Shown one piece after another: positions 23,272 through 61,274 of a stretch of DNA of 64,000 bases. Location of the stretch: NCBI GenBank assembly GCA_973895155.1, contig OZ316897.1, forward strand, positions 2,049,312 through 2,113,311, given 5' to 3'. The translations under genes and the position numbers were made by a program. The stretch comes from Marsupella aquatica. Its lineage: Eukaryota; Plantae; Marchantiophyta. The notes under the pieces were generated by a model, which saw nothing but the letters and a program-made list of their open reading frames with translations, had not been told where the DNA came from and ran no database searches. How positions within the stretch are numbered: the first letter of the stretch is position 1; each line of letters begins with the position of its first letter.

Positions 23272-26200
23272 ATGCTGACGAAGTTCGAGACGAAGAGTAA
23301 TCGGGTGAAGGGGCTGAGTTTCCACCCGCGCCGGCCATGGATTCTGGCCAGTCTGCACAGTGGAGTGATCCAATTATGGGATTACCGGATGGGAACGCTG
23401 ATCGACAGGTTCGATGAGCACGACGGGCCCGTCCGTGGAGTGCATTTTCACAAGTCGCAGCCCCTTTTCGTCTCCGGAGGTATGTTTGTCTGTCTAGTTC
23501 TCTATGTGTCGTTCACATTGTTGTTGGTTCGTTTAGGTTAAGTGTTTAGATCTGATTCGCAGAACAGCCGTGCGCATTTCTCTTGCTCTTGCTCTGTCCT
23601 TTGTTTCTTCTACCGTTCTTCCTCGCTTTGCTTCCTTTCTGCGTGTGCTTTCCTAGAAAGTAGTGGCGCATTGCTTCGTTTCTTCATTCGCATTGGATGT
23701 TCTTGATCGGCAGAATTCTGTCAGGTCCACCATTTGATGTTGTGTCTTCATTACCTGGAGCTGAGGTTGCATTACCTTATTTTTGTCTTCATTGCCTGGA
23801 GCTTAAGCTGCATTACCATACTTGTGCTTTGTTTGCCTGGAACTCAAGCTGCGTTCCCACACTAGTGTCGTGGTTGCGTGGAGCTAAAGTTGCATCACCA
23901 TACTTGTTTATGGTGGCGCGGAGCTTGTGCTGTATAATTATATTTTGTCTTTTGACTGCCTGGTACTTAAAGCTGTATTACGTTGCTTTTTGTTGCAACT
24001 GCTGTCGTGCGGGAGGCAATGCATTTGTGGGTCTTGTAGAGGTTTTTCTTCTCTTGTGGGCATCTGTTTGAGGAAATCTGATTGCTGTAAAAAACAATCA
24101 CGGGGTCCTTTGCACGGTAGAGTTGCTCTCATGTTCGAGAAGTACGGTGTGGAGAGATCCGTGAGTTTTGAACGTGTTACGGAAGCCTCCCTTCTTGTCA
24201 TCTAGATCGTGGTCCACTTGCCCTTCTGCTTGTGCCCCTCCTTCCGATCAGGAAGTTTGATCATCGTCCTAGTTAGTCTCCTATTTGGTGACCTTCTGGT
24301 CTGCAATTTCAATCATAGAATCTTGATAACCTGTGTACATTGTTCTTATCGTGGCCCTTTTTGAGTCCCGGTGGACAATGGAATTCATTGTGTTCATTCC
24401 TTGGATCTCATCGCAGGGGATGACTACAAAATCAAAGTGTGGAACTACAAGCTGCGCAGATGTCTCTTCACTCTGTTGGGGCATTTGGACTACATAAGAA
24501 CAGTGCAGTTTCACCAGGAGTATCCCTGGATCGTAAGTGCCAGCGATGATCAGACCATTCGGATCTGGAATTGGCAGTCTCGCACTTGCATATCAGTCCT
24601 CACTGGCCATAATCATTATGTGATGTGCGCTTCTTTCCATGTCAAGGAGGACTTGGTTGTTTCGGCTTCTTTGGATCAGACTGTGAGAATTTGGGACATT
24701 GGCGCGTTGAGGAAGAAGACCGTGGCTCCTGCAGAAGATATTTTGAGGCTCACGCAGATGAATACAGATCTTTTCGGTGGAGGAGATGCCGTCGTGAAGT
24801 ACGTTCTCGAAGGTCATGACAGGGGCGTGAATTGGGCCGCCTTCCACCCTACACTGCCCCTCATTGTCTCAGGTGCTGACGACCGCCAGGTTAAGCTGTG
24901 GCGAATGAATGGTAAGTGTGAAGCAAAAGTTGTGCTGTTCCTACTTTTTGGCTGAGCGTTTCCTTTGTGATCCCTTGGGGAGCTCAGTTGTAGATGCGGG
25001 AGCTCTTTGTCAGATGGATACCAGAAATTGCGACTCCCTGCTAGTTTGCAAGTGCAGGGAGGCCTGACGTTCATAAATTTAAGGAATGATCTCTCTGGTG
25101 AGCTGGTTTGAAGGTGCAGATAGGTCTTTTTTATAAATGGATTCGAGAAATAGTGATCACTCTGGGGAGGTGATTTGTATTGGAGGGAGCTTTATTATCA
25201 GCAATCAATGCATTACATAAAAAGCATGTTTGAGTATTGCTAGTGGATCTGATTGGCCGGCTTTTTTTTTAAAACCTTCCTAACCCGGGGGCTCGTTGAT
25301 ATCATAGGGACATCACTGCTCATCTGTGTGTCCTCGTGCTCCAATTCCAGCTCATTTCTACCCGTTGACTTGGATTAAATGGAGGAAAATTGCTAATGGT
25401 CTGAGTGGATGGTTGTCTTAACTTGCGTTGTTTCCTTAATTGATGTAGATACGAAAGCATGGGAGGTGGACACTCTCCGGGGTCATGTGAACAATGTCTC
25501 CTGTGTGATGTTCCATGCACGTCAGGATATTATTGTCTCAAACTCGGAAGACAAGAGCATTCGAGTGTGGGACATGTCTAAGCGCACCGGGGTTCAAACC
25601 TTCAGAAGAGAACACGACCGATTTTGGATACTTGCAGCGCACCCTGATATGAATCTTCTAGCAGCTGGGCATGACAGCGGGATGATAGTCTTCAAGTTGG
25701 AGCGGGAGAGACCCTCGTACGCTGTCCATGGAGGGACTCTTTACTTCGTGAAAGAGCGGTACCTTCGGACTTACGATTTTGCCACTGCCAGGGACAATCC
25801 TTTAATCTCTATTAGGAGAACGGGTTCCACAGGCATGAACCAGGGCCCCAGATCTATGTCTTACAATCCGGCGGAAAATGCTGTCCTTATCTGCTCGGAC
25901 GTCGATGGGGGTTCTTACGAGCTGTACACGATTCCCAAGGACACCACAGGACGGAGTGAGACCACACAAGAAGCAAAGCGTGGTTATGGAGCTTCTGCCG
26001 TTTTCGTTGCTCGTAATCGTTTTGCTGTCTTGGACAGAAATCACAACCAGGTGATCATCAAGAATCTCCGCAATGAGGTCACCAAGAAGGTGAATTTGCC
26101 CTTTGCCACCACTGATGCCGTGTTCTATGCCGGTCTTGGTAACCTACTCTGCAGGTCGGAGGACAAGGTCATCCTCTTCGACGTGCAACAGCGAAGTACG

Positions 26201-28396
26201 CTGGGCGAGCTCAATACTCCGTTCATCAAGTATGTAGTGTGGTCCAATGACATGGAGCTGGTTGCTTTGATAAGTAAGCACGCCATCATCATTGCCACAA
26301 AGAAACTCGTGCATAAATGCACTGTGCATGAGACTATCAGGGTAAAGAGCGGAGCGTGGGATGACTCTGGTGTTTTTGTCTTCACGACTCTGAATCACAT
26401 CAAGTACTGTCTGCCAAATGGAGACAGCGGCATCATCAGGACCCTTGAGGTGCCAGTTTATATTACTAAAGTCTCAGGATCCTCCGTGTACAGTCTAGAC
26501 AGGGATGGAAAGAACCGGGTCATCCAGATTGACACCACAGAGTACATGTTCAAGCTGGCTTTGATCCAGAAAAGATACGATCAAGTCCTCCAGATGATCC
26601 GTGGGTCACAGCTATGTGGGCAGTCCATAATAGCTTATCTTCAACAGAAAGGATTCCCAGAGGTGGCTTTGCACTTTGTCAAGGACGAGAGAACAAGATT
26701 CAACCTGGCTGTCGAGTGTGGAAATATTGAAGTAGCGGTAGCATCTGCTAAGGAGATTGACGAGAAGGATTATTGGTATAGACTGGGAGTGGAGGCTCTG
26801 CGCCAAGGTAACCATGAGATTGTGGAGTACTCCTATCAGAAGACCAAGAACTTTGAGAGGCTGTCCTTTTTGTATCTGATCACTGGAAACCTTGAGAAGC
26901 TTTCCAAGATGCTGAAGATTGCTGAAATGCGGAACGATGTGATGGGCCGTTTCCATAATGCTCTCTATCTTGGTGACGTCCAGGAGCGAGTGAAGATTCT
27001 GGAAGAGTCGGGGCACCTTCCTTTAGCATATGTGACTGCAGCTATTCATGGATTGACTGAAGTGTCCGAGAGACTTGCTGCAGAGCTAGGAGAGAATGTC
27101 CCACCTCTTCCGTCGGAGGAATCATCGGCATTGCTTTTGCCTCCCACACCGATCCTGAGGGATAACAACTGGCCATTGCTTTTGGTCAGTAAAGGCTTTT
27201 TCGAAGGTGCTTTTGCAGCTGATGCAGGAGCGGCCACTGAGGTAGAGGATGAGGGGGCCGAAGGTGCCTGGGGCGAGGAGTTGATTATTCCGGATGTAAC
27301 CGAAGGGGAAAATGGTGATGTGCACGTCGATGCAGAGGAGAATGGCGGAGGAGAAGACGATGAAGAAGGCGGATGGGATATGGAGGATTTGGAGCTTCCA
27401 CCAGATGTCACGCCGGATACCACTTCTACCGTGGACTCGACCTATTTTGTTGCTCCGAATCCTGGAATGCCTGTGAAGCAGATATGGGTTCAGAAATCCA
27501 ATCTCGCAGCAGAACACGCAGCTGCAGGGGCGTTTGACACGGCTATGAGACTCTTGAATCGGCAGCTAGGAATTTCAAATTTTGCACCCTTGAAGTCAGC
27601 CTTTTTGGATCTCAACCTTGCAAGCCATTCATCCCTACCCGCACTTGTGTCAGTACCTGCCTTGACATTTGCTTTGGAGAGAGGATGGACTGAGGCTGCA
27701 AGTGCAAATGTCCGTGGCCCACCAGCTTTGATATTCAAGTTGTCAGCTCTTGAAGATAAGTTGAAGGTGGCGTATAAAACCACTACTGAAGGCAAGTTCA
27801 TAGAGGCTTTGAGAGTGTTCCTCAGTATTTTGCAGACTATTCCCTTGGTAGTCGTCGAATCTCGGAAAGAGGTGGATGATGTGAAGGAGCTACTGGGGAT
27901 CGCCAAGGATTATGTTCTTGCACTCAAGATAGAGCTTAGAAGGAAAGAAGAGAGGGACAATCCAGTTCGGCAAGCAGAGCTTGCTGCGTACTTCACTCAT
28001 TGTACCCTTCAACCCACGCACTTGAAGCTCAGTCTGCAATCTGCTATGAGCATTTGTTTCAAAGCAAAGTGCTACAACACGGCAGCTTCCTTCTGTAGAC
28101 GGCTTTTGGAATTGAATCTCGCGCCAGCAGTTGCCTCGAAGGCCCGTCAAGTCTTACAAGCATGTGAGAGGACACCCCGCGATGAGTTGCAACTCAACTA
28201 CGATCCCCGTAACCCATTTGTAGTTTGCGGATCTACCTTTACCCCCATCTACCGAGGTAGTGAGGATATCTCATGCCCGTTCTGTGCAGCAAGGTTTGTG
28301 CCACAGGTCAGAGGGCAAGTTTGTCCTGTTTGCGATCTGGCTACAGTTGGAGCTGATGCTTCTGGTTTGACTTGCTCAGCTACTCAACACCGGTAG
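23272..28396 (+). CDS. COPA: Coatomer subunit alpha (alpha-COP), ~1216 aa; exons 23272-23479, 24417-24911, 25449-28396
   Basis: [40 protein letters not shown] start, WD40 repeats, C-terminal [10 protein letters not shown]...CPFC...CPVC; phase-1 GT-AG introns restore frame. Confidence 0.98.
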
Positions 28397-40560: not shown

Positions 40561-42438
40561 AGGAATGGCAGCAGTTTATGTTTTTTCCTCGCATCTCTCC
40601 ATCTCCACGGTAGACTTAATATGGTGTTCAATTGACCAAAGTTCACTTTCCAAAAGTAATGCGAAGATGCCACTCGGTGTGAAAGTTTATCCATTAATTG
40701 TACTGTTTTTGTACTGAAATGGGTCCCAGGCCTTTTGTCTGCAGCTTCAAAAACTGAAACTATATAAATAGTTATTTCCCCGGTTGTGATATATTCAATC
40801 CCGCCATTTTGTACTCAGACATAGTCTGCTTACAAAATGCACTTTTGAAGGGAACTCATTATGACCCTTGGATTTAAGGCTTAAATTTAGATGCCCATGA
40901 GATCTATGAAAGGAAGTCAGAATAGAGAGGATGTCTTAGCTTGAGACGCGGAAAGGCTTCCACCCACACCTAGACTCATGCACTAACATCCATAAAAAAG
41001 ATTATAATCTCAAGATCATTGGAAATTGAGTGTGAGCTGACATTTGGCTATCATGGGTAGGTGGGTCTGATAAGAAAATGGAAATAGACCCCACATTACA
41101 TTTGCACACATGATTGCCACATTCACTTAAAGTAAAAGTATAGAAAGTGAACAATACAAATTAAATTTTGAGTCAAAAAGGGATCATTTACAGGAAAGTG
41201 AGAAAGATTTTAAAGTTTATTGGGAGAGATCAATTTTATTTTTATTTTTTCTATTCTCTCTTAGAAGTAGTTTTTCCAAGTTACAGTAACACCAAATCCT
41301 AATTCTTTTTGTATTAACCTTATTGACCAAGGACACAATGGCCACAACAATGAATTGGTCACATTGATAATTGATACTAACAATGAAATAGTCACAACAA
41401 TGAAAAGGTTGTAATGACAACTGTGCAACACATTGGCAACGGATTTGTATACATATCGTTTTTTAAATCAAACATTATAACAGGCTATCCTGCCTGAGAG
41501 CTTCCCTGCAGTTTACAACAGTGGAAAAGGAAATTCATGGCTCCAACCAGGCTTGTCTTTGTTTCAGTTGTGAGACTTGATGACAATTACCCATCTGCAC
41601 ACACTCATATGTAAATAACCTATGCGAATTGAACTCTAAACTGATTGTACCATGTCTTGTAACTGAGTATGTTGTGCATAATTGCATCGTTGATAATAGT
41701 TCTTTGTAAATCTTCAATGAAAGTTGTGGCCATAATCCATAACCCCCTCACCAACCTGGCATGGGGATTTGCTAATTACCCTGTGTAATTGGTGCGAATC
41801 AAGGGCTGTGGCTGTTACTCTGCGTACTTTTTCCAATGTTTATTCTTTCTTGTGTTATTGAGGTCCTAGGTTCAATTCCTAGCCGGTTGATGCTGCAGCC
41901 TGTACGAGTACCTTACAAGAACCCAAAAAGCTTGAGATATGACCAGGATGACACATGCTTTAACAATGTCTGCGTAAGCTTAATCCCTTCATCCTTCCTA
42001 TCTTGTGGCTGCTCGTATGAAGTGTTGGATCGCATTTGGGAAGTTTTGTATCTGAGCGCACCTCGAGGCAAAGAGATCGTTGAGTCAACAGTTGAGATGA
42101 TAACAATTGGCAATTGGCAATTGTGCAGCTAAGCCGAATATTTTACTTATCCAATATGAAGAGCAAAGGGCGCAAATTGGAATTCAACTCCATAGTGCAA
42201 ATTCGTCATCTGAAAATGCTTCTTAACCATGCTTGTTTAGCCATTGACGGGTATTCACAGTTTTTACTCATTGGTCTCGTGAAGCTCAAAGTAACCTAGA
42301 TCACGAGAGAACGAGTGAACTAAATCGAATATATAATTGCCACTACATACATAAGCCGGCTCTTGGATCTAGAATAACGTAGAACAACTTCAATGAACCC
42401 CTGCCAGAAGATGCTCCACCTTGCCCGTCGCCCGTCTC

Positions 42439-44630
42439 AATCATATTCACATTTCACTCGTTTAACCTCTAGAACGCACGCGGACTCTATCCTGTACACG
42501 GTTTACATGGTAGGCAAATCTGACTTTCAGAGTAAGGAAGACAAAACTGAAGGTCCAAGAACAGCAGCAGGGAATGATTGCAATCATCCAGAAAACTGAG
42601 TACCGTTCATTCGTAGCAGTGACAGTGTGACTGTTGCTACTCCCCAGGTTTCATGGCAAAACAATTCATAATATTACCTGACTTGTCGGGACTTACGAAA
42701 GCCCAATTTCTTCATCAACATTTCCGTAAAGTCTAGAATTTTCGCGCACATCTAAACGTTTTCCAGGACCTGATGTAGATAGGTCACGCTCACTGGATGA
42801 ATCTGTCGGGTCAACAAGGTCATTTGCGGCCATACCACATCGACCACATTGAATGTCGTTATTCGGTGCAGCAAGATGACTCAAATCTGTCTCACTATCA
42901 ACACTGCGAGTTGCATCGTCTGTGTCCATTCCGCTTGAGGAATCTGCGAATGGCGTGTCGATATCGATGGCATGTATTTCCGTCGGCCTTGGAACAAACA
43001 TGCTGCGTCCAAATATCAACCCCGTGGAAACTGAGTATATGCAACACCACATGCATGAGTAAAGAAATTGAGGGCAAGCTTCCATTAGATCATTGTTTTG
43101 GGCATCCAGACATGTGTTATCTCACCTGTCCAAATTCAGGCTCCTGTACCCTCTACAACGGAGTTTGAGGATGCACGGCGCAAGTTACAAGACACACTCA
43201 AAGGTCGGCACCCATTGATAGGGCATGTGGCATATGTCCATGCTAGAGGAAAATCAAAAGATGCAGTCTCTGGGTTTATTCAAAGACACAGGATAATCAA
43301 TACTGAATGCTACAGAACATATTGCTACTAGTGCCGCCTGAATTCGCGAACTTGTGAGTGAAAAAGCATCTGTGGGCTCTAGAGCGCGATCCAAACTTTG
43401 GATCGTTCTTCAAGGCGCAATAAAAAGTCATAAGCTTCTGCCGCAATCTCAAAAGGGGTGCATGATTGTAAACAGTGGAACTTCCGCTCCATGATACTCT
43501 GCTTATTCGCAGTTCCGTTCAACTCTTACTGATAAGCTCCGTCAAAACAGAGTTTTTGCGTGTACGAACGAAAAATGCATGAATACTCTGTTTCATTCGA
43601 GTTCCAGCACAAATTCATGGCCACCCAGCAGCGTTGCTGAGTGTAAGCCAATTTCTGTACAATTGCAATATCACAGGTTGACCGTAACTTAGTTGTATGG
43701 GCTGCGTCAGGTTGCTAAGAAGATCTGATCCCACCTTGCCCAATATACAATACTACCAACGGTAGCCAGCATTGCATACTATCATAGCTCGCGGCCTGAA
43801 ACCAGTTTCACTCTCTCGTTCACAGGAAGGCAAGGCTACCTTCACAAATAGCCTACTTGTACTGAATTCACAAAGACAATCAAGCTCGCCGTGTAAGAGT
43901 TGCCGGAAAGTCTGATAAGTTTTTAATCTAATCTTCACGAAAATTTGAGAAGAAAACAGAATAACTTTCACCACACCAAAGAACGCCACCATCGATACGA
44001 CGAAAATTTGAAGTGCGCGAGCTATTCATCGAAGGACGGGGGTAAAACAAGATCTGTGTACCGCATTTCGTGGTGTTCAGAACAGTATTGTGATACAAAT
44101 AACAGAGGGAGCCACCTGGGACACGAAGGATCGATGGGAAGAAAGCCAGAGGATACCAGGCATGGGATCAGTCGCAAACCAGGCAGATGGGTTTCCCGAT
44201 GGAAACAGACTGCTATTCACCGAATTCACGACGAGACGACGCAGCTTTACGAAGAGAAATCCATATACACTGGCTAATGACGAATAGTACCTGAGGAGTT
44301 GCACGTCCGCCTGCTCTTCACGTACCTCCTCAGGGACTTCTGTGATGACAGCATGAGAGCTCCTCAAAATCCTCCAAAGCCATCTGAACCACTCCCAATT
44401 GAAGACCAGGGCTCTCGTAACTACGACAAACACAGCGCTTGACAGTACCCCGGCCAGCACGTTAAAAGCAAGGGCGTCCATTCGTCCGTCGATCAGATTT
44501 CCTTCTCGTATGTCCACCGTCGATCCCCGGACTCGGAAAGAGCTCGTCTGCAGAGTACGTCGTCCTTCTGTTTGGGCCAATCTGTCACGTACAAATGGTG
44601 CGTGCGATTCGCAACAATAATAATTGGTGC
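42439..44630. repeat. Copy 1 of a ~2.2-kb direct duplication (copy 2 at 56418-59925)
   Basis: Near-identical sequence; identical ORF-track translations (e.g. MVAFFGVVKV..., GIQTCVISPV...). Confidence 0.95.
42693..44481 (-). CDS. Putative orphan gene, hydrophobic N-terminus plus acidic tail (~166 aa); exons 44481-44291 and 43002-42693
   Basis: MDALAFNVLAGVLSSAVFVVV..WEWFRWLWRI exon ends at CAG|GTACTA (CAG|GTTAGT in copy 2); phase-2 join to GACGCAG|C at 43002 is in frame with the 42693 ORF. No homology recognised. Confidence 0.3.
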
Positions 44631-44960
44631 TAGTAGCCTTGCCTCCGTGGTGCCTTGGTTACCGAATTGGTGCTAGTTGCCTTGGTGCCTTGGTTACCGA
44701 GACAGATGACGATGCCGCACTGTAGCCACGGCACTACGGCAGAGCTTGGCGCAGTGCATAGCTAATGCCCTGACCTTGCGCCTCTGTAGAATATAAGTCC
44801 AGCAGTACATTCCACGCATCATCACTACATCGGCTCCGAGCTCCACTAGTCTACAATTGCTTCGAGCATCGCCGTAGCCTTGCCTCCATGAATCTGTCTG
44901 GAGACGGCATCGGCGCGACTAACTTGCACGTCGTTCGTGCCATCGGGGAAATTCCCCGCT

Positions 44961-46049: not shown

Positions 46050-49000
46050 AAAGTAGAGAAAATATACACATACTTTTTACAGAAAAAGGGCAAATAGAGT
46101 ACAAAAGAATAAACAAGAGAGGTCCCAAGTGGACAAAACCAAACACAAAAGAAGTGAGCAAAAGGAAACCCTAAAAACCAAGAAAGAGGAACTAAAAGAA
46201 GTGAGCAAAAGGAAACCCCTAAAAACCAAGAAAGAGGAACTAAAACTACCGCAAATGGACCGAGGTCCTCATCATACCTAGCAAATGTGGCAACAAGCTA
46301 GTGGTCTACATCAAGTGTCGAAACTAGATCGGCAAGTGGGACAGGAATGTCCCCTAGGGGGGCTAGCCGCTGCGGAGTCACACTAGCACCCACTGTCAGA
46401 GATCGACGATAGACGGCCCGAGCTTGAGCACGCTGTAAGGTGACTGAAATGCGTTGGCGAAAGTGCGTGGTCAAAACAGATAGCGGGGGCCCGGTGGGAC
46501 CCATCCGGCCGTGCACATCCCGAGCAGCTTGGCGAAGAAGCCCGTCGAACTGATGATGGAGACGCCCAAATATCTCAAGAGCAAGGGGCAGGAAGCTATC
46601 AGATGAAGCTCGTGCAACATATTTGGCCTCCTTCGTTGTTGTTGCTCGTGATGCTGCTGCCCCTGCCGTTGTTGCCGCTGTCCCAATGATGTCTTGGCGC
46701 AATGGGTTTGCCACCACTACATCTGCCAAAGTACGGTGACCGTGACGGACCATGGTAAGATCCACCCGTAACCGCTGTGATGGAGGACCAGGTAACTCGA
46801 GCACCACCTCCCGCCGTGCACAGACCAAAGAGCCAGAGAGAACCTGAGCAATCGCATCTCTCACAGCGTCGTGAACAAAAATGGTTTCGCCGCCCAAACT
46901 GCATCGAAGAAGATGGACACCTGTGGCATCACAAGGCTTCCCACAAGTGCAAGTAGGAGGTAAACCAGCAAGAAGTGGGTGGGGCAAGCCCATACGAAGA
47001 CGCATGGCTGTCGCAAACTCCGCTGAAGACATCCGTAGGTGAGGAATGACTGGATTGGCCTGAAGCCAGCCTCCTGCGCCCTTCCCTCCGGAAGAAAGAA
47101 TCCGAGCTCGGTCCGTGTCAGGTGCCTCAGTGAGGATGCTAGAAAGGGTCAAAGCGTGCATATGCCCAGCAAGGTCTGCCTGAAGACGGACAGGGTCCAA
47201 GGATAAAAACTCCTGGAATGAAGGTAACGCAGCTCGAACAGGATCGGGTAATGATGACCGCGCCGTGCGCAAATGAACCTTAAATGGGAGGGAACCCTCC
47301 TCGACCTCCATGAGAGATGAAAGTAAAAAAGGTCGATCCTCAGTAAGGAAATGATCTGCCAACAATGAGAAGGCGGCCGCCCACGCGCCCAAGAAGGCCA
47401 AAGGTGCAAGGCGCTCAGTGGAAGTAAGCCCAAAACCACCGTGAGAAATAGGAAGACTGAGCTGTCGATGAAGCCACGGAGATGAGAGTAAAGTACCTAG
47501 CCTTAAAAGAGAGGCCAAAGTCTCACAAATGGAGACATCAAACGCTCGGAGGTGTAGATAAAGATCCTCGGTAGGGGGATGTGTCCGAGCCAAATAGGAC
47601 GCACGAGGTGGATGCATCTCAACAACAACCCAAATGCTGCCTGAGAGTCTGCTAACTTAGGGAGCATAGGAGTAGGGGCTAAGGCAGCCTGGAGAGCGTC
47701 AGCAATGAAAGATGAGCAAAAGGAGGCGGTACCGACTGGGGAGCCAAGGACCCGAAGACCGTTGGCAGGACGTAAGAACCCAGGGAGAAGCGCAAGATCA
47801 GAGGGTAATCGAGCTAGACTCCATGCACGACTCTTCACCGGCTGAACTCGTAAACCGAGGGCCAACAAATGGGTGGAAAGGGTGGCGAGGGCAGAAATAA
47901 CAGCAACAGGTGGACCAATGATGTGGGTGTCATCTGAAAGGGAGGGGAAGATACACTGGGGGTGGGCCGCGGAGGCTTCTCGTAAAGCAGTAAAATGGGC
48001 AATGGCAAAAAGAGGCCCACCCAAAGGGTCACCCTGACATGTACCTTCTGCAGAAGAAAGAGTGGTATACACTCCTATAGAAGTGTGATGACTATAGAAG
48101 AGGGGGGCCTCGAACCCATACAAACAACGGACAAAGGGGATAAGGGACTGGATGTCTGGATCCGCTGCCCTCAAAGCACGAAAAATTGCTACCCGAGAAA
48201 CCGTATTGAAAGCATTGGAGACATCAACCTGGAGGACAACCCAATCAGGGTGGAGGTCCAAGGTAGTACGAATACTCGCAATAACTGTCTCACAACCGCC
48301 AGGAACGCCCACTGCAAACTGATGTGGAGAGAGATGATCCGATAGTGCAGAGTGATACTGCGATGAAAGTGCGCGAGACACCAGACGAAGAAAAACCTCT
48401 CCAATAGCTATGGGCCGAACACCCGGTGAAGACTTAGCCATGGCCAATAAACGAGAAGCAGTGCTCAAAAGCCGAGAGACTGGAGGAGGCAAACGGCCGG
48501 CAGCAATACACTGGCAAAAGGAGAAGAAAACTGGAAAACCAGACTGAGGATCCTCAGGGGGGAATAAATCACGAAAATGCTCAAAGACATAGCCAGAGGG
48601 GCCACCAGCCGCGCAACGCGGAGCATGGAGGAAAGCATAGGTGAAGTGGTCCCTACTAAACTGAAGATCCTCCTCAGGCTCAAAATCCTCCACGAACAAA
48701 GGGAGCTGATCATAGGGCTGCGGATGGAGATCCTGAAGGGCCGTCAAGGTGACCTTGCCAGGGGGGGCTGGTGTGGTGGGAGAAAGGGCCTGGACCGCAC
48801 GACGATATTCACCAGCCTGGGCTAAATGACAAGAGCAACGAAGGCGTCTGTGCTCTGGAGGATGAGAGTGGCGAGCTGGGTCAGACAAAGCACGGGTAGT
48901 AAAGGAACGGGCTCGAAGAAAGTACTCTTCCTGAAGCTGTTCCCAATCTCCCCGTAGAAAACGATGGATACGAGAGGCAGTCTCACGATGACCCACGCGA

Positions 49001-50676
49001 CCACCGTGACTAGGGAGGGTAAGAGTCCACTGTGGAAAAAGCATGAGTAAAGACCAATAGGAGACCTCGATAGGATGCGCCAAGATAAGCTGCATGAGTT
49101 GCAACAAGGATGACCGAACTAATGGGCGCAACGCTAGTGGGATGTGGTTATAAAGGCGAGGTCTAATGTACCCTGGATGGTAGGCTGGAAGGGGGTCTAG
49201 AGAGCAAACCCAACTCCATGCCTGCTCGGAAGCCTCCAAGGAAGGAGGGGCAGAGCTAACTGGGTCAAGAGGGGGCTGGGGCTGGGATTGGGCTTGCTGG
49301 CGACGTTGGCACCGGCCCCGCCCGCGGTGATGAGGAAGGGAGAGGCCAACCCAGCCACACTCAGGACAAGTATGCAGGGGACGCTCGTCTGGGGAGGGAA
49401 CAGGGAACGACTGGACAGGAGGTGGGGGGGGAACCGACGTGGATGAAGAGGCCGGAGGGGGATGTTGGAGGGGTGGAGGGGGAATGGGCTGGGGAGAGGA
49501 GCCAGGGCGTCGATGGGGTGGGCAGTAGACTGGGGGGACTGGCAGAACATCGGGCATGGGGTCATCACGAAGATGAGAGAGATCCAATGAAGAAGAGCAA
49601 ACACGAAGGCGACCACGAGGCGGGGGGGAGGAGGGGGGAGAACTGTGTTGGGGGGGCTGGGCGCTTGCCCCGCGCCAACACTCTCAACGTAGACATGACA
49701 GGTCGCAACCCGATAAAAGCAAAAGCGCATCAAGAAGCGACAAAAGGCCCAACCAAGACATGTGAAAAGAAAGGGAAGGCTATGGAGAGAGCCCACCGCG
49801 TCAAGATCCGAGAAGCGGCGCCATCGCTAGCCTAGAAAACCGTTGAGCACGTGCAGGCACAGCCGGGAACTAAGCTGGAGCTCTCGTCGATGTGTCCGTT
49901 GAGGAGTCAATGCGAGTGAATATCTCTTCGCTGATTTGAGCGTGCTGCTACAGCTCTCAAAGATGGTGGAATGCAAACTGGTCCACTAAACTTGGCAAAA
50001 ATCACCTTGTCAGAACTGAAGAAGAAAGGCAACCACCAAGCGGAGGAAAAACATGGCAAGACAGGAATGCTCCAAAGCTGATCAAGGGAAACCGTCACCA
50101 AAAATGGAGGAGTAAATCAGAATCGTAATCGGAGCCGAAAGTGGTTGATATGTCACCAAAAGGACCGCGGTAGGGATAGATGTTGCACTCCCGGACAAGA
50201 GCTGGCCAAATCACATGAGAATGCCGGATTTCGTGAACGAGGAACTGCTACAGGACCCCAAAGCTAATTGAAAGTGAGAACGGTGGAAATTGAAGAAAAA
50301 ATGTGAGAGCTAATCAAAGTCCAATCGGGGCAATAGGAGACCAATTGGACCGCTCTTGGGATCAATCTGATGCTCCCGGAGAAGAGCTATACAAAGCACT
50401 TGAGAAATCTGAAATCCGTGAAAGATTGACCGAGATATGACCGTCGAAAGGAAGACGAAAATCGCAGGAAAACGACTGAAAAATGGCGAAAATGAATGTG
50501 ACCATAAGTATGTCGATACGGCACCATTTTGGACGTGTTTTATATCGATTTGATGCGCCTCGGCAAGAGCAAGCTAATGCAACTGAGAAAATTGGATTCC
50601 GAGAAAAACTGAGTGCGGGAGGGTAGTCGAAGTGGCGCGAAAACTGTGCTAGAGTCTGAACTCCATAGCCAGGAGC
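46050..50676 (-). mobile_element. Near full-length CRE-clade-like non-LTR retrotransposon (RT + restriction-like endonuclease), subfamily A; 5' boundary approximate
   Basis: Single long ORF with zinc finger, RT and RLE (see pseudogene entry); T-rich 3'UTR ending ~46050 with no poly(A). Confidence 0.85.
46298..49587 (-). pseudogene. CRE-type ORF: Pro-rich N-terminus, zinc finger (CPEC..HH..C), reverse transcriptase, CCHC and RLE; one frameshift near 47610
   Basis: RT motifs GGPSG, RPIAIGE, QFAVG..GGCE, DVSNAFN, QGDPLG, LSDD, GL.VQ..KS, LGSPVG; RLE motifs CTCG..D..G.HLL.C, HDAVRD, RVD, ADVVV, KEAKY, FLPLALEIFG; the two ORFs overlap and join as RCI/PRASYLART. Confidence 0.9.
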
Positions 50677-55800: not shown

Positions 55801-58456
55801 GAGGGGGATGGGGCTTTGCTACAGTGCTAGAGGACTTTCCAAGGATTCAGAGGCTGGTTTTCTTTTTTGTACACGTTTAATATGCAATTATAGCCAATGA
55901 AATGTGGGAACAAGCCAGACTTCACCTTAAATGAACTAAGTGGGGGCACTATTGGTAAAACCATAAATTATGGATTCTACTCATGTTCTAGTGCACCCGT
56001 TGTGGGTCCCTTTCATTCCTAATGTCTCGGCTAATGTGGCCATGTTTTCTTATCAAATACGTCCAGGTTTTTGAGGTATTCTGGAGAGTGGACTGCTTGG
56101 TCCGTTTACTTCTCCAGCCTGACACTTGGTGCATTTCAGATTAATAGCTACCAGAATCTCCACTTATGTCAGGAACAAACGTATACTAACAAATCTCTGA
56201 AATCGGAAACACTCTCTTTGCAATGGATTCTTTCCAACTCTCATCAATTTAAACTATTAATTCACATGGTTTTCACATCTACAGCGATTATCCTGCACCG
56301 AGTACTTCAGCTTGCGCCTGCTGATAAATCCGAGTCAAGCTACTGTCCCTATACTGTACCTACATATAACATTCCCATTGTGAAAACTTCCTGCATTTAT
56401 CTATTTCTGACTGACCTAATCATATTCACATTTCACTCGTTTAACCTTCAGAACGCACCCGGAGTCTATCCTCTATACGGTTTACATGGTAGACAAATCT
56501 GACCTCCAGAGTGCCAAGGAAGACAAAACTGAAGGTCCAGGGAAATTGTCCTGGTCAAGTCCGTGGCCTCACTCTCAATCTCATAAAGTTACAGGGAATG
56601 ATGGAGCAATATTGCAATCACTGGAAACACCGGACAACTGAGTACCGTTCTTCCGTAGCAGTGACAGTGTGACTGTCGCTACTCTCAAGGTATCATGGCA
56701 AAACAATTCATAATGTTACCTGACTTGTCGGGACTTACGAAAGCCCAATTTCTTCATCAACATTTCCGTAAAGTCTAGAATTTTCGCGCACATCTAAACG
56801 TTTTCCAGGACCTGATGTAGATAGGTCACGCTCACTGGATGAATCTGTCGGGTCAACAAGGTCATTTGCGGCCATACCACATCGACCACATTGAATGTCG
56901 TTATTCGGTGCAGCAAGATGACTCAAATCTGTCTCACTATTAAACACTGCGAGTTGCATCGTCTGTGTCCATTCCGCTTGAGGAATCTGCGAATGGCGTG
57001 TCGATATCGATGGCGTGTATTTCCGTCGGCCTTGGAACAAACATGCTGCGTCCAAATATCAACCCCGTGGAAACTGAGTATATGCAACACCACATGCATG
57101 AGTAAAGAAATTGAGGGCAAGCTTCCATCAGATCATTGTTTTGGGCATCCAGACATGTGTTATCTCACCTGTCCAAATTCAGGCTCCTGTACCCTCTACA
57201 ACGGAGTTTGAGGATGCACGGCGCAAGTTACAAGACACACTCAAAGGTCGGCACCCATTGATAGGGCATGTGGCATATGTCCATGCTAGAGGAAAATCAA
57301 AAGATGCAGTCTCTGGGTTTATTCAAAGACACAGGATAATCAATACTGAATGCTACAGAACATATTGCTACTAGTGCCGCCTGAATTCGCGAACTTGTGA
57401 GTGAAAAAGCATCTGTGGGCTCTAGAGCGCGATCCAAACTTTGGATCGTTCTTCAAGGCGCAATAAAAAGTCATAAGCTTCTGCCGCAATCTCAAAAGGG
57501 GTGCATGATTGTAAACAGTGGAACTTCCGCTCCATGATACTCTGCTTATTCGCAGTTCCGTTCAACTCTTACTGGTAAGCTCCGTCAAAACAGTGTTTTT
57601 GCGTGTACGAACGAAAAATGCATGAATACTCTGTTTCATTCGAGTTCCAGCACAAATTCATGGCCACCCAGCAGCGTTGCTGAGTGTAAGCCAATTTCTG
57701 TACAATTGCAATATCACAGGTTGACCGTAACTCAGTTGTAGGATACGAATTGAACCTAGGAATTGAAGGAATTGAAGGAATTGAACCTATGACATGGACC
57801 GGCTAGGTTATATTCACAGGTTGACCGTAACTGAGTTGCAGGATACGAATTGTTGCACTCACCACGCACAAATGTCAGCCGTTTATACAAGACGTCCACC
57901 CACTATTGGTGAGTACTTGGTGAGTACTTCCGTATCCCACACCCTAGACCGTAACCCGTGGTGTCTCGCTTTGCCATCGTCAGCGTGAGAGTCCAAAACT
58001 TCAAGAGGTATATGACCCTCTGCCTGACCTCGGCCACTGACAGAAACAGAGGAAAACGGGTACACACAAACTTATTTCCAAAATTGTGAGGTTACACAAA
58101 GAAAGGAGAATAGAAGACGAAAGGCGGATACAAAAACCCCAAAATCTAGAGGACCAAGCACACTAAGAAGAATGAAGAAACCGGGTAATGAGAAACTGAG
58201 CTTATTTCCAAAAAATTGTGAGGTTACACAGAGAACGAACAATAGAAGAAAGAAGAAGAAAGGCAGATACAAAATCCCCAAATCCAGAAGATCAATCACG
58301 CCTAACCTATGACATGGACCGGCAACCTGTGAACGGTCAACAGGCTAGGAATTGAAGGAATTGAACCTGTGAACGGTCAACCGGCTAGGAATTGAAGGAA
58401 TTGAAGGAATTGAACCTAGGACATGGACCACGAATTGAAGGAATTGAACCTAGGAC

Positions 58457-58853
58457 ATGGACCGGCTAGGAATTGAACCTAGGACCTCCAGTGTACATCA
58501 TAGTGATCTACCACAAAGCTACAAGTCCTTCATGCCTACATCCCTCATCAGTTCAAGTGAGGTTCATTTCCAACACCCTCCCTTGAGCTGCACCTGTCAT
58601 GCCTGCATCCCTCATCAGTTCAAGTGAGGTTCATTTCCAACACCCTCCCTTGAGCCGCACCTGCTACAAGGGAAACTCCTGTTCTTTGGCTCTGATACCA
58701 TGCTAGAATTGTCAACGGCATGGACCGGGTAGGAATTGAACCTAGGACAGGCTAGGAATTGAACCTAAAACCTCCAGTGTACATCATAGTGCTCTACCAC
58801 TGAGCTACAGGCCCTTCATGCATGCATCAGTTGAGTGAGGCTCATTTCCAACA
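58457..58853 (-). mobile_element. TRIM (miniature LTR retrotransposon) with tRNA-derived LTRs, Helenus-like
   Basis: 5'LTR 58853-58701 TGTTGGAAAT...AATTCTAGCA; PBS TGGTATCAGAGCCA 58700-58687; PPT AAGGGAGGG 58651-58643; LTR restarts at 58642 and, after a 67-bp duplication, at 58575; 3'LTR end lost in filler DNA. Confidence 0.9.
58458..58528 (-). ncRNA. tRNA-like cassette in the 3' LTR (second copy 58721-58814 in the 5' LTR, with duplicated T-arm); not a functional tRNA
   Basis: 71-nt GGACTTG TA GCTT TGTGGTA GATC ... CTAGG TTCAATT CCTAG CCGGTCC A; the 5'LTR copy has a perfect D-arm GCTC-AGTGGTA-GAGC; anticodon stem does not pair. Confidence 0.8.
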
Positions 58854-60062
58854 TGCTGAGTGTAAGCCAATTTCTGTACAATTGCAATATCACAGGTTGA
58901 CCGTAACTGAGTTGTATGGGCTGCGTCAGGTTGCTAAGAAGATCTGATCCCACCTTGCCCAATATACAATACTACCAACGGTAGCCAGCATTGCATACTA
59001 TCATAGCTCGCGGCCTGAAACCAGTTTCACTCTCTCGTTCACAGGAAGGCAAGGCTACCTTCACAAATAGCCTACTTGTACTGAAATCACAAAGACAATC
59101 AAGCTCGCCGTGTAAGAGTTGCCGGAAAGTCTGATAAGTTTTTAATCTAATCTTCACGAAAATTTGAGAAGAAAACAGAATAACTTTCACCACACCAAAG
59201 AACGCCACCATCGATACGAAGAAAATTTGAAGTGCGCGAGCTATTCATCGAAGGACGGGGGTAAAACAAGACCTGTGTACCGCATTTCGTGGTGTTCAGA
59301 ACAGTATTGTGATACAAATAACAGAGCGAGCCACCTGGGACACGAAGGATCGATGGGAAAAAAGCCAGAGGATACCAGGCATGGGATCAGTCGCAAACAT
59401 GGGTTTCCCGATGGAAACAGACTGCTATTCACCGAATTAACGACGAGACGACGCAGCTTTCGTAGAGAAATCCATATACACTGGCTAATGACGAACACTA
59501 ACCTGAGGAGTAGCACGTCCGGCTGCTCTTCACGTACCTCCTCAGGGACTTCTGTGGTGACACCATGAGGGCTCCTCCAAATCCTCCAAAGCCATCTGAA
59601 CCACTCCCAATTGAAGACCAGGGCTCTCAGAACTACGACAAACACAGCGCTTGACAGTACCCCGGCCAGCACGTTAAAAGCAAGGGCGTCCATCCCTCCG
59701 TCGATCAGAGATCCTTCTTGTCTATCCGCCGTCGATCGGAGATCGTTATCGTCTGTCGTCCGTCGATCAGAGGTCCTTCTCGTATGTCCGCCGTCGATCC
59801 CCGGACTCGGAAAGAGCTCGTCTGCAGAGTACGGCGTCCTTCTGGATGGGCCAATCTGTACCGTACGCACCCCGCCTCACGTACAAATGGTGCGTGTGAT
59901 TCGCACCAATCATAATAGGTGCTCGCTGCCTCGCTGGGCTTTATAGTTTACAAGACCGAACATCATTGGTAGAGAGATTTGCTTGGTGGGGTCTCACTTG
60001 AAAGCTGCTTAACAAGACCCAAAAAGTCCAAAATGACTTGGTGGGACCGAACATCATTGGTA

Positions 60063-60782
60063 GAGAGATTTGCTTGGTGGGGTCTCACTTGAAAGCTGCT
60101 TAACAAGACCCAAAAAGTCCAAAATGACTTGGTGGGACCTCAAACGTAAGCCAGCAAGAAGTTGCCGGGCCCTGCAAGATCCTCTCGTCGCAGCATTTAC
60201 CAGCGCACAGCACAGTCACCCTAAACCCACGACATTGTTCTCAGCATGTCTGGACATTGTCCACATCACTCTCAAATGATACTCTCCGATCCTCTTTTTT
60301 TTGTTTTTGTTTTTTTGCCTTGAAAACCGAAAGCAGGCCCATCCAACAGAGGATAGACGTCCTGCTTTAGAACATGCATTTCTATGCTCTCCGCTCCTCT
60401 TAGAGCAGCGCAGCACAGCTTGGACTCCAATCAACCACAATGTATAAACATTGGGTGCAATGGCACCCCGACTTTTTGCCAGGGAACTCACGGTAGCCTT
60501 GCCTTGCCTCCCGTGAGCGATGCAGTGGGCTCCAGATAATGGGTACACTTCACCTCCTGTGAGCGATGCAGTGGGGTCCAAATAATGGGCACACAATAAG
60601 TTCTCCCTATCCTCGCTCCAATGTAGTTTTTTGCCGTTCTACAATAGGGTAAGGTGCAGGGCCGGCAAAGTCATACTAAACCCGGTCGATCCTACGTTTG
60701 AGGTCCCACCAAGTCATTTTGGACTTTTTGGGACTTCTTAAGTCGGCAGCTTTCAAGTGAGACCCCACCAAGCAAATCTCTC
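60063..60782. mobile_element. Non-autonomous Mutator-like element (MULE), ~90-bp TIRs; left end plus TSD tandemly duplicated (59954-60044)
   Basis: TIR GAGAGATTTGCTTGGTGGGGTCTCACTTGAAAGCTGC...GGGACCTCAAACGTA inverted at 60693-60782; 9-bp TSD TCATTGGTA at 60054-60062 and 60783-60791 (also 59963-59971). Confidence 0.9.
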
Positions 60783-61274
60783 TCATTGGTATGGAGAGGC
60801 CTGGTAATTGTAACTTGCCAGCAAATAGTAAAATTTTTCCTAGCACGAGCAAAAAATGTTTCTACATGACCCTTATTTTTCTACATGCAAATGCCTGGTT
60901 ATCAACTGCCTGGCTGGTAACGTCTCTTTTGGGGATTCCCTTTTGGCTAGCAGAGCTAGCTAGCCATCTGCAGCTTTTATAAAAACACAAAAAATGTAAA
61001 AGGCACCTAAAAGGAATTGAAATTTGGAACCATTATTGTCTCCTTATCAAAATCTCCTCATTATCAAAATCTTCTGTTTGCTCACAACATAGAATACCTC
61101 CGAGAGGCCAGACCGGGCCTAGCCTCTCATACAAATGATGCATGTCATTTGCTATTTGACGTCATAAAAAGCAAGGTTTGCGTGCCTTGCCCTTCTATAA
61201 TGTAACGGCAAATCTTAAATCTAGAAAAATCTGATAATCAGGAAAATAATTGAATAGGTAATCTTTTGAATATC

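What the first reader, a model, noticed from the sequence alone, without database searches (positions are those of the whole stretch)
58457..58853. Miniature LTR retroelement whose LTRs contain a tRNA-like Pol III cassette
Seen: on the minus strand a 153-bp TG..CA LTR with imperfect terminal inverted repeats (TGTTGGAA / TTCTAGCA), an adjacent PBS complementary to plant tRNA-iMet (TGGTATCAGAGCCA), only 58 bp of internal sequence ending in a PPT (AAGGGAGGG), then a second LTR. Each LTR holds a ~71-nt cloverleaf: A-box/D-arm (TAGCTCAGTGGTAGAGC, perfect in the 5' LTR), B-box/T-arm (CTAGG-TTCAATT-CCTAG) and a partly paired acceptor stem, while the anticodon arm is eroded. Known: Cassandra TRIMs carry 5S rRNA in their LTRs, and tRNA-in-LTR TRIMs have been described as 'Helenus' (recalled, not checked against this sequence). 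Inference: a ~350-bp non-coding SINE/LTR hybrid transcribed by Pol III and mobilised in trans by an iMet-primed autonomous retrotransposon; retention of promoter arms but not the anticodon arm points to selection on the promoter or fold. Likely missed or mis-called as a tRNA pseudogene by annotation, and possibly an undescribed family in this lineage.
Basis: partly seen in the sequence, partly recalled or inferred. Interest (0 to 1): 0.85.

Follow-up and report, generated by a model that had tools for sequence, protein, structure and literature searches.

The report
Decayed tRNA-bearing miniature LTR retroelement, liverwort
This is a broken copy of a many-copy, roughly 330-base non-coding LTR retroelement whose terminal repeats are built around a worn-out tRNA; the type, called Helenus, was described in 2024, but among plants only in a clubmoss, so here it turns up in a liverwort.

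Summary
On the minus strand there is a 153-bp TG..CA LTR (58853-58701), a 14-nt tRNA-iMet-type PBS, a 58-bp internal region ending in a purine tract, and a second LTR. Both LTRs carry a 71-nt segment that passes Rfam's tRNA gathering score.

Three corrections apply:
- A 67-bp tandem duplication sits between the purine tract and LTR2.
- LTR2 is cut off at 58456, about 18 nt short of its end, and runs into a T-arm minisatellite.
- No 5-bp target duplication is visible. The element lies in a 1.1-kb patchwork flanked by a 63-bp host duplication that a paralog at 43.6 kb lacks.

Public contigs from three studies pile up 10-100 times deeper on the element than on its flanks. They show the intact termini (TGTTGGAA...TTCCAACA) followed by varied flanks, so this is a real interspersed family.

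The host is a liverwort: its coatomer alpha is 88% identical to Marchantia's.

The layout meets the tested criteria of Helenus (Kojima 2024), but it is not the Selaginella family. RNA polymerase III transcription and trans-mobilisation remain untested.

The scan's first readers noted four other such elements elsewhere in this genome.

Verdict: a new member of a known kind, and this copy is dead.

The parts
58701..58853 (-). 5' LTR (LTR1), 153 bp, TGTTGGAA...TTCTAGCA. Relative to the family it has an 8-bp gap in the first 40 nt, a 23-bp T-arm duplication and two private changes in the 3' terminus.
   Evidence: Family letters at 58703, 58705 and 58717 come.
58744..58814 (-). tRNA-like segment of LTR1: intact A box and B box, acceptor stem 5 of 7 paired, and a private TTTT at 58770-58767.
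   Evidence: Rfam RF00005 at 36.8 bits against gathering score 29. T-run. Most family contigs read G,G on the + strand at 58768/58769, i.e. CC on the element's sense strand.
58687..58700 (-). Primer-binding site TGGTATCAGAGCCA, the plant initiator-Met tRNA type, directly after the LTR's CA.
   Evidence: The same 12-mer is the conserved Cassandra PBS (PMC7215508).
58643..58686 (-). Rest of the 58-bp internal region. The purine tract AAGGGAGGG lies at 58651-58643.
58576..58642 (-). Extra 67-bp tandem copy: the first 46 nt of an LTR plus the last 21 nt of the internal region, including a second purine tract.
   Evidence: family D6; period 67, 97% matches
58456..58575 (-). 3' LTR (LTR2), 120 bp, lacking its last ~18 nt.
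   Evidence: Loose ends of other copies at 58455/58456 continue to TTCCAACA and then vary.
58458..58528 (-). tRNA-like segment of LTR2. The A box has three private changes, the T arm is intact, and the acceptor stem is 6 of 7 paired.
   Evidence: Rfam RF00005 at 32.1 bits. Majority letters at 58506, 58515 and 58516 come.
58300..58455 (-). Minisatellite of T-arm pieces (periods 9, 34 and 40), interleaved with inverted 15-nt copies of host flank. It replaces the end of LTR2.
57741..58299 (.). Rest of the patchwork between the 63-bp repeats. It holds a segment that exists as its own locus elsewhere (57853-58300, with an internal ~130-bp duplication), a 40-bp partial host copy (57813-57852) and more T-arm pieces (57741-57812).
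58854..58916. Host sequence abutting the first base of LTR1. This is the upstream copy of the 63-bp duplication.
   Evidence: (D8)
57678..57740 (.). Downstream copy of the 63-bp host duplication (98% identical). The paralog at 43635-43697 has one copy and nothing in between.

Best explanation
The stretch is an old, damaged copy of a multi-copy non-autonomous LTR retrotransposon of the Helenus / TRIMp3 type, in a liverwort genome.

An intact family member is about 334 bp:
- two LTRs of about 138 bp with perfect 8-bp inverted ends (TGTTGGAA...TTCCAACA);
- a PBS for the 3' end of initiator-Met tRNA;
- about 44 nt of filler;
- a purine tract.

Each LTR has about 40-47 nt of variable leader, then a 71-nt tRNA-derived segment that keeps the A box, the B box and three of the four cloverleaf arms, then about 20 nt to the terminal CA.

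Inferred working: the tRNA-derived internal promoter in the 5' LTR recruits RNA polymerase III. Transcription then starts near 58814 and runs through the PBS and purine tract into the 3' LTR. A coding LTR retrotransposon that primes with tRNA-iMet supplies the reverse transcriptase and integrase. It is probably Copia-like, judging by the TGTTGG..CCAACA ends.

My confidence differs by step: identity as a tRNA-bearing TRIM family about 0.9, trans-mobilisation about 0.85, Pol III as the working promoter about 0.5.

This particular copy can no longer move. Its 3' LTR is truncated and its 5' LTR has gained a Pol III stop (TTTT). The element's downstream side was rebuilt, most likely by break repair that copied short nearby and distant templates. 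Any original 5-bp target duplication is either gone or hidden inside the 63-bp host repeat.
For: Structure: LTR pair, TG..CA ends, PBS and purine tract in the right order and in direct contact.

tRNA origin: the two Rfam tRNA hits above gathering score are the only Rfam hits in the 64 kb.

Family evidence, all:
- In four runs from three studies, summed contig depth over 58424-58871 is far above the flanks. X1: 1,180-6,700 against about 50. X2: 320-2,900 against about 30-37. X4: 800-10,800 against about 115-137. X5: 52-174 against about 4.
- Between 137 and 416 contigs were laid per run.
- Loose ends at 58455/58456 read an 18-nt conserved LTR end finishing in TTCCAACA, then unlike flanks.
- Loose ends after 58642 (the LTR start) are unlike each other (agreement 0.44).
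- Loose ends after 58702 show the same LTR end joined to the PBS.
- Most family contigs carry the canonical A box where LTR2 is mutated (58506, 58515, 58516).
- Most read G,G on the + strand at 58768/58769, i.e. CC on the element's sense strand, where LTR1 has its TTTT.
- The listed variable sites within the LTR1 tRNA segment (58768, 58769, 58776, 58786) lie outside the A and B boxes.

Size: 120 + 18 = 138-nt LTR, and 138 + 58 + 138 = 334 bp. This fits first-reader notes of 329-, 331- and 374-bp elements and a 137-bp solo LTR elsewhere in this genome (unchecked).

Class: the Helenus definition and TRIMp3 reasoning are in PMC10886601.

Host: coatomer alpha is 88% identical to Marchantia polymorpha's, and the next named hits are lycophytes at 78%.
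Against: - No RNA data were available, so there is no evidence of any transcript, Pol III or otherwise.
- No autonomous partner is in the window.
- No other copy could be read as sequence, so TSDs, solo LTRs and the universality of the tRNA segment are inferred from contig depth and loose ends only. Those figures also sum any unrelated tRNA-like DNA at 80% likeness or more.
- This copy has no TSD.
- Its LTRs differ by 12.5%, while the paralogous flanks differ by only 2.2-2.9% in substitutions. Either the two LTRs were never identical here, or the element decays faster than its surroundings, or the paralog lost the insertion.
- The tRNA-like RNAs do not fold better than shuffled sequence.
Confidence: 0.8

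Rival explanations
1. This copy never integrated by integrase. A linear cDNA or a copied stretch of a family member was captured as filler during repair of a chromosome break, together with the other patches between the 63-bp host repeats.
For: - The paralog has the uninterrupted site and a single copy of the 63 bp.
- The 1,113 bp in between is a mosaic of T-arm pieces, direct 40- and 63-bp host copies, inverted 15-nt host copies, and a segment with its own locus elsewhere.
- No 5-bp TSD is present.
- The LTRs are 12.5% apart against 2.2-2.9% for the flanks.
- Another short T-arm/acceptor fragment sits alone at 41858-41896.
Against: - The host/element junction falls exactly on the first base of the LTR (..CTCAGCA|TGTTGG). 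That is expected for integration or an end-complete cDNA, but not for copying from a genomic template.
- The order LTR-PBS-internal-purine tract-LTR is kept.
- The simpler two-step story fits equally well: normal insertion with TSD CAGCA, then a break in the hairpin-prone T arm of the 3' LTR. It also explains why the 63-bp repeat ends exactly at the LTR boundary.
Confidence: 0.25
2. The tRNA-derived segment is a passenger with no promoter role. The family is transcribed by RNA polymerase II, from the LTR leader or by read-through from neighbours, like ordinary TRIMs.
For: - No transcript data are available.
- Kojima (PMC10886601) states that Pol III function of Helenus is not experimentally validated.
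- The cloverleaf is not thermodynamically favoured.
- The anticodon arm is eroded.
Against: - The A and B boxes are the best-kept parts in this copy's LTR1 and in most family contigs. Private hits in LTR2's A box are not shared by the family.
- The leader upstream of the tRNA part is the least conserved part of the element, with depth 3-5 times lower, which is the opposite of what a Pol II promoter in U3 predicts.
- Apart from the private TTTT, the sense strand has no run of four T from 58853 to 58300. This is compatible with Pol III reading through, though it is weak evidence at this length.
Confidence: 0.3
3. It is not a retroelement family feature at all. It is a one-off: a tRNA-derived SINE or tRNA pseudogene that landed in, or was duplicated with, a local direct repeat.
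For: - tRNA-like hits alone would be annotated that way.
- The T-arm pieces are locally amplified into a minisatellite.
Against: - Both LTRs carry the segment at the same offset.
- The PBS and purine tract abut the repeats.
- Hundreds of contigs in four runs cover the tRNA part together with the LTR ends and internal region. They share the conserved termini and then have unlike flanks.
- First readers noted four more such elements in the same genome.
Confidence: 0.03

Closest known systems
Helenus (TRIMp3), in particular Helenus-1_SMo of Selaginella moellendorffii (Kojima 2024, PMC10886601)
   Same: - TRIM layout with a tRNA-like segment inside each LTR, flanked by a short leader and a short tail.
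- Box A TRGCY..YGG and box B GGTTC are present.
- The PBS is of the tRNA-iMet 3'-end type (tggtatcGgagc there, tggtatcAgagc here).
- The size is tiny: 325 bp there, about 334 bp here.
- The termini match: TGTTAGAA..TTCCAACA there, TGTTGGAA..TTCCAACA here.
- The 26-nt acceptor plus D-arm piece of the Selaginella LTR matches 58789-58814 with 2 mismatches. A 20-nt T-arm piece matches 58470-58489 with 2 mismatches.
   Different: - The host is a liverwort, not a lycophyte.
- Compared by eye with the sequence printed, the leader beyond about 14 nt, the anticodon region, the LTR tail and the internal region are not alignable. It is therefore a different family.
- The LTR is about 138 nt against 120, and the internal region 58 against 85.
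- The shared tRNA part could simply come from the same conserved tRNA gene.
Cassandra (5S rRNA-bearing TRIM of vascular plants; Kalendar 2008, 2020, PMC7215508)
   Same: - A non-autonomous LTR element with a small-RNA gene-derived internal Pol III promoter in both LTRs.
- An identical PBS 12-mer, TGGTATCAGAGC.
- A tendency to local tandem rearrangement.
   Different: The captured gene is a tRNA, not 5S rRNA. Rfam gives no 5S hit. Cassandra is also longer, at 565-860 bp.
tRNA-derived SINEs (SINE2)
   Same: A degenerate tRNA head with A and B boxes, short, non-coding and multi-copy.
   Different: SINEs have no LTRs, PBS or purine tract, and they are copied by LINE machinery at their 3' tail. Here the tRNA head is embedded in a terminal repeat of an LTR-type element.
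Retrozymes (plant non-autonomous LTR elements with hammerhead ribozymes in the LTRs)
   Same: A small non-coding LTR element with a structured RNA motif in each LTR and an iMet-type PBS.
   Different: No hammerhead motif is present. The only Rfam matches at E up to 1 in 56000-61000 are the two tRNA hits.

Membership tests
Helenus / TRIMp3 (Kojima 2024) | Two direct LTRs around a short non-coding internal region, with total length in the TRIM range (311-1263 bp for Helenus). | tested here: met
   LTR1 is 153 bp, the internal region 58 bp, and LTR2 is 120 bp and truncated. The canonical size is inferred to be about 334 bp.
Helenus / TRIMp3 (Kojima 2024) | A tRNA-like sequence inside the LTRs, with box A (TRGCY, YGG) and box B (GGTTC). 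| tested here: met
   Rfam RF00005 scores 36.8 and 32.1 bits against a gathering score of 29. TAGCT..TGG and GGTTC can be read.
Helenus / TRIMp3 (Kojima 2024) | A PBS just inside the 5' LTR and a purine tract just before the 3' LTR. | tested here: met
   TGGTATCAGAGCCA lies at 58700-58687, directly after ..CA. AAGGGAGGG lies directly before TGTTGG, and this junction occurs twice because of the 67-bp duplication.
Helenus / TRIMp3 (Kojima 2024) | A 5-bp target-site duplication (plant and fungal Helenus). | tested here: inconclusive
   This copy has no 5-bp TSD next to both LTRs. The paralog shows the empty site ..CTCAGCA|ACGCTG.., and CAGCA recurs only at the far end of the patchwork, inside a 63-bp repeat. 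Other copies could not be read.
Helenus / TRIMp3 (Kojima 2024) | An interspersed multi-copy family with conserved element ends and differing flanks. | tested here: met
   Contig depth is 10-100 times the flank depth in 4 runs from 3 studies. The conserved 18-nt LTR end is followed by unlike flanks. This is contig-level evidence only.
Helenus / TRIMp3 (Kojima 2024) | A working RNA polymerase III promoter. | not testable with these tools
   No RNA run holds the stretch. The source paper itself says this has not been validated experimentally for Helenus.
Helenus-1_SMo (the Selaginella family itself) | Sequence similarity along the LTR and internal region, not only in the tRNA part. | tested here: not met
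   Only the tRNA halves, about 14 nt at the 5' end, the last 8 nt, the PBS and the purine tract resemble each other. The rest is unalignable by eye against the sequence printed. No scripted alignment was made, because that sequence has no reference id.
Cassandra | A 5S rRNA-derived segment with box A and box C in the LTRs. | tested here: not met
   There is no 5S rRNA hit in the window at gathering score, nor at E up to 1 around the element.
Functional tRNA gene | A cloverleaf with an intact anticodon arm that tRNA finders call. | tested here: not met
   ARAGORN finds none at default settings. Relaxed runs give a 94-nt '???' call and an off-register Leu call. Minimum-energy folds are not cloverleaves.
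tRNA-derived SINE | A single tRNA-related head plus body and a LINE-type or A-rich tail, with no terminal repeats. | tested here: not met
   The tRNA-like part is embedded in LTRs, with a PBS and a purine tract.

The most novel reading that the evidence does not exclude
The liverwort family and Selaginella's Helenus-1_SMo descend from one ancestral tRNA-bearing TRIM. That would make a Pol III-type LTR retroelement lineage as old as land plants, parallel to Cassandra in vascular plants, rather than two independent captures of the same tRNA. The two share the position of the tRNA module in the LTR, the TGTTrGAA..TTCCAACA ends, the iMet PBS, the tiny size, and about 80-90% identity in both tRNA halves. 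None of this excludes common descent. None of it proves it either, because tRNA genes and integrase end-signals are conserved in their own right.
Probability: 0.2. Interest if true: 0.6.

Novelty: new member of a known kind. Interest (0 to 1): 0.4.

Why it matters
- **Wider host range.** Helenus-type elements were described in 2024 from fungi, animals and a single plant, a lycophyte. A well-populated family in a liverwort extends the class to bryophytes.
- **Test material.** It offers tractable material for the open question of whether these LTR elements are really driven by RNA polymerase III, and how such a transcript satisfies the end-repeat needs of reverse transcription.
- **Annotation.** The tRNA-like pieces pass Rfam's tRNA threshold, so they will inflate tRNA pseudogene counts. 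They will also be missed by LTR finders tuned to longer elements.
- **Break repair.** This copy shows the hairpin-prone T arm acting as a local source of minisatellite and repair filler.

Tried and rejected
- **Metagenome scans.** I ran two scans, one with an exact 23-mer of the T arm/acceptor and one with a degenerate A-box...B-box pattern that also covers the Selaginella element. Both returned 0 loci, so no other copy could be fetched as sequence.
- **RNA evidence.** No listed run is on record as RNA, so expression could not be examined.
- **Possible empty allele.** An X4 contig skips 57677->58854. It carries the three diagnostic letters of the paralog at 43.6 kb (57575A, 57594A, 58909T), so it is the paralog, not an empty allele.
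- **ARAGORN.** Default settings call nothing. Relaxed thresholds give only off-register pseudo-calls, so no isotype can be assigned. A literature search for the D-arm 19-mer found nothing. From memory the D arm resembles eukaryotic tRNA-Cys; this was not tested.
- **Thermodynamic folding.** It gives no support for a stable cloverleaf.
- **Coding context.** ORFs of 90 aa or more around the locus have no Pfam match.
- **Literature.** Searches for Helenus/TRIMp3 or TRIMs in liverworts found no report.
- **Alignment to Helenus-1_SMo.** I made no scripted alignment, because that sequence exists only as printed text and has no reference id. I used short patterns and comparison by eye instead.
Full report
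**What is there**

Read on the minus strand, the stretch runs as follows.
- Host sequence ends in ..CTCAGCA at 58854.
- A 153-bp repeat, TGTTGGAA...TTCTAGCA, occupies 58853-58701.
- It is followed directly by TGGTATCAGAGCCA (58700-58687).
- Then come 44 more bases ending in AAGGGAGGG (58651-58643).
- Then TGTTGGAA begins again.

The repeat finder and a pairwise alignment show that the second full repeat starts at 58575, not at 58642. The 67 bases 58642-58576 are an extra tandem copy. They consist of the first 46 nt of the LTR plus the last 21 nt of the internal region. The duplication is 97% identical with period 67.

LTR1 and LTR2 align over 112 positions with 98 identities (87.5%) and an 8-nt gap in the leader. 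LTR1 also contains a 23-bp tandem duplication of its T-arm/acceptor end (58722-58767).

The PBS 13-mer occurs only once in the 64-kb window. The same 12-mer is the conserved PBS of Cassandra elements (PMC7215508). From established knowledge it is the complement of the 3' end of plant initiator-Met tRNA.

**The tRNA-like parts**

Rfam's tRNA model hits 58744-58814(-) at 36.8 bits and 58458-58528(-) at 32.1 bits. Both are full length and above the gathering score of 29. They are the only Rfam matches in the whole window.

- In LTR1 the D arm/A box (TAGCTCAGTGGTAGAGC) and the T arm/B box (CTAGG-TTCAATT-CCTAG) are intact, and the acceptor stem pairs at 5 of 7 positions.
- In LTR2 the A box has three changes and the acceptor stem pairs at 6 of 7.
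- The anticodon arm is eroded in both.

These are not tRNA genes.
- ARAGORN calls nothing at default settings.
- With relaxed thresholds it gives only off-register pseudo-calls.
- The minimum-energy folds keep the T hairpin but are not cloverleaves, and they are no more stable than shuffled sequence (z = +0.92 and -0.71).

The word "cloverleaf" should be read as ancestry, not as a stable fold.

**It is a family, not a one-off**

No other full copy lies in the window. There is only a fragment of about 39 nt (T arm to LTR tail) at 41858-41896. Two scans of the metagenome collection found nothing.

Public sequencing runs settle the point. Five runs from three studies hold the locus or parts of it, and I laid the contigs of four of them at 80% likeness or better. 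Summed contig depth over 58424-58871 compares with the flanks as follows.

| Run | Element | Flanks |
|---|---|---|
| X1 | 1,180-6,700 | about 50 |
| X2 | 320-2,900 | about 30-37 |
| X4 | 800-10,800 | about 115-137 |
| X5 | 52-174 | about 4 |

Between 137 and 416 contigs were laid per run. These sums are not copy numbers, but they show tens of copy-equivalents or more.

X5 lacks most of the surrounding locus, so the family is present independently of this insertion.

The loose ends are the most informative part.
- Contigs that match LTR2 up to 58456 continue with a conserved 18 nt. On the element's strand these end in ..GTTCCAACA, and after them the sequences are unlike each other.
- Contigs matching the PBS continue into the same 18 nt.
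- Contigs that reach the LTR start at 58642 continue into unlike sequences (agreement 0.44).

The family therefore has defined ends, TGTTGGAA...TTCCAACA, a perfect 8-bp inverted repeat, with many different flanks.

Three conclusions follow for this copy.
- LTR2 lacks its last 18 nt.
- LTR1's odd terminus TTCTAGCA is two private substitutions away from the family's. The family letters at 58703 and 58705 confirm this.
- The canonical LTR is about 138 nt (120 + 18). LTR1's 153 nt equals 138 minus the 8-nt gap plus the 23-nt duplication.

A canonical element is then about 334 bp. First readers of this scan noted elements of 329, 331 and 374 bp and a 137-bp solo LTR with tRNA-like LTRs elsewhere in this genome. 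I could not check those notes, but the sizes agree.

I only compared this copy's letters with the majority at listed sites.

**How this copy compares with the family**

- At 58506, 58515 and 58516, most contigs carry the letters that restore the canonical A box. LTR2's A-box damage is therefore private.
- At 58768/58769 most contigs read G,G on the + strand, i.e. CC on the element's sense strand. The TTTT at 58770-58767 in LTR1 is therefore also private.
- That TTTT is the only run of four or more T on the sense strand from 58853 to 58300.
- Ten of the roughly 22 listed sites where the majority differs are A in the window against G in the family on the + strand. That means C-to-T on the element's sense strand, the pattern of deamination decay.
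- The listed variable sites inside the LTR1 tRNA segment (58768, 58769, 58776, 58786) fall between the boxes.
- The leader bins are 3-5 times shallower than the tRNA bins. Loose ends at 58826/58828 show diverged leaders.

This points toward the tRNA part being the conserved core. The list was truncated, however, and depth also sums any other tRNA-like DNA, so I count this only as soft support for selection on the promoter.

**The insertion site**

A paralogous segment at 42439-44642 matches 56418-57740 plus 58854-59934. Substitution divergence is 2.2% and 2.9%.

The paralog reads straight through ..CTCAGCA|ACGCTG.. and has one copy of a 63-bp stretch. At this locus that stretch is present twice (58854-58916 and 57678-57740, 98% identical), with 1,113 bp in between.

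The element's first base abuts the host exactly. Downstream of the truncated LTR2 come, in order:
- a minisatellite of T-arm pieces, interleaved with inverted 15-nt copies of host flank (58300-58455);
- a segment that exists as its own locus elsewhere (57853-58300, covered by an X5 contig at about 92% identity);
- a 40-bp partial host copy;
- more T-arm pieces;
- the second 63-bp copy.

There is therefore no 5-bp TSD adjoining both LTRs.

I favour a two-step reading, which is inference.
1. A normal insertion took place at ..CT[CAGCA]|ACGCTG.
2. Later a break occurred in the palindromic T arm of the 3' LTR. It was repaired by repeated short templated synthesis.
3. The last patch copied the upstream flank and re-annealed on the 5-nt TSD. 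That would explain why the 63-bp repeat ends exactly at the LTR boundary.

The alternative is capture of a cDNA or a copied element as filler in one repair event. I give it about 0.25.

The 12.5% LTR divergence against 2-3% for the flanks fits neither story neatly. It may reflect faster decay of a methylated repeat, non-identical LTRs at origin, or loss of the insertion from the paralog by recombination between the 63-bp repeats.

An X4 contig that skips the insertion carries the paralog's three diagnostic letters. It is therefore not an empty allele.

**Host and context**

The window encodes a coatomer alpha subunit (25409-28396). It is 88% identical to that of Marchantia polymorpha, and the next named relatives are lycophytes at 78%. 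The genome is therefore a liverwort other than M. polymorpha. The runs' organism names are coded.

ORFs around the element have no Pfam match, so the element lies in repeat-rich, apparently non-coding DNA.

**Comparison with what is known**

Kojima (2024, PMC10886601) defined Helenus as TRIMs with a tRNA-like sequence in the LTRs. He grouped Helenus with Cassandra (5S) and Ajax as TRIMp3, meaning TRIMs with a Pol III promoter. Key points from that paper are these.
- Helenus was found in fungi, six animal phyla and one plant, Selaginella moellendorffii (Helenus-1_SMo: LTR 120 bp, internal region 85 bp, 5-bp TSD).
- Pol III function of Helenus is unvalidated.
- The elements probably arose by SINE insertion into a TRIM LTR.

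The present family meets every structural criterion I could test. The exceptions are the TSD, which is inconclusive for this copy, and Pol III activity, which is untestable here.

It resembles Helenus-1_SMo in several ways.
- The position of the tRNA module in the LTR.
- The ends.
- The PBS type and the overall size.
- The Selaginella acceptor/D-arm 26-mer hits 58789-58814 with 2 mismatches.
- A 20-mer T-arm piece hits 58470-58489 with 2 mismatches.

By eye, against the sequence printed, the leader, anticodon region, tail and internal region do not align. It is therefore not that family. The shared tRNA halves may simply reflect capture of the same conserved tRNA.

I found no report of Helenus or TRIMp3 in liverworts in the searchable literature.

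**Verdict**

- The interpretation as a tRNA-bearing miniature LTR retroelement is supported, and the recalled name is right.
- Pol III transcription and trans-mobilisation remain inferences.
- The element type is known. Its presence as a sizeable family in a liverwort appears new, so this is a new member of a known kind.
- This copy is truncated, internally duplicated, mutated in one A box and carries a Pol III stop in the other LTR. It is a dead relic whose 3' side was rebuilt by patchwork repair.

Noticed in passing
window 42439-44642 and 56418-59934: A dispersed duplication of about 2.2-3.5 kb within the window, with 2.2-2.9% substitution divergence plus indels. The copy at 56-60 kb carries the 1.1-kb patchwork and the copy at 42-44 kb does not.
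   Followed up: partly
window 57678-58916: A patchwork insertion bounded by a 63-bp host duplication. It contains direct 40- and 63-bp host copies, tandem inverted 15-nt host copies (TTGACCGT/TCACAGG), T-arm minisatellites, and a roughly 450-bp segment that has its own locus elsewhere. It looks like multi-round templated break repair.
   Followed up: partly
window 41858-41896 (+): An isolated fragment of about 39 nt from the same LTR family, running from the variable loop through the T arm and acceptor into the LTR tail. It has no other LTR parts around it, so it is a relic or another filler patch.
   Followed up: partly
window 59954-60783: A MITE-like structure. Inverted arms of about 90 bp (60062-60148 against 60693-60783, 93-100% complementary) are separated by about 545 bp. 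The left arm is duplicated in perfect tandem (59954-60044 = 60045-60135).
   Followed up: no
window 59697-59799: A 31-bp-period tandem repeat with three copies at 80-90% identity. It is partly shared with the paralog at 44482-44642.
   Followed up: no
window 25409-28396 (+) and 1213-2418 (+): Host genes. One is a 995-aa uninterrupted ORF covering most of coatomer alpha, 88% identical to Marchantia polymorpha's. The other is a GT47 exostosin-domain ORF.
   Followed up: partly
window 46298-49587 (-): Two long overlapping ORFs. The 694-aa ORF has a reverse-transcriptase domain (RVT_1), and the 439-aa ORF has no Pfam match. It has no iMet PBS, so it is not a candidate partner for the TRIM.
   Followed up: no
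runs X1-X5 laid on window 57400-59300: Two different organism labels (A and B) hold this exact locus at 70-78% of sampled words. A third sample, labelled A, holds only 6% and is 8-10% diverged where it does match. This suggests mislabelling or deep divergence within the label.
   Followed up: no
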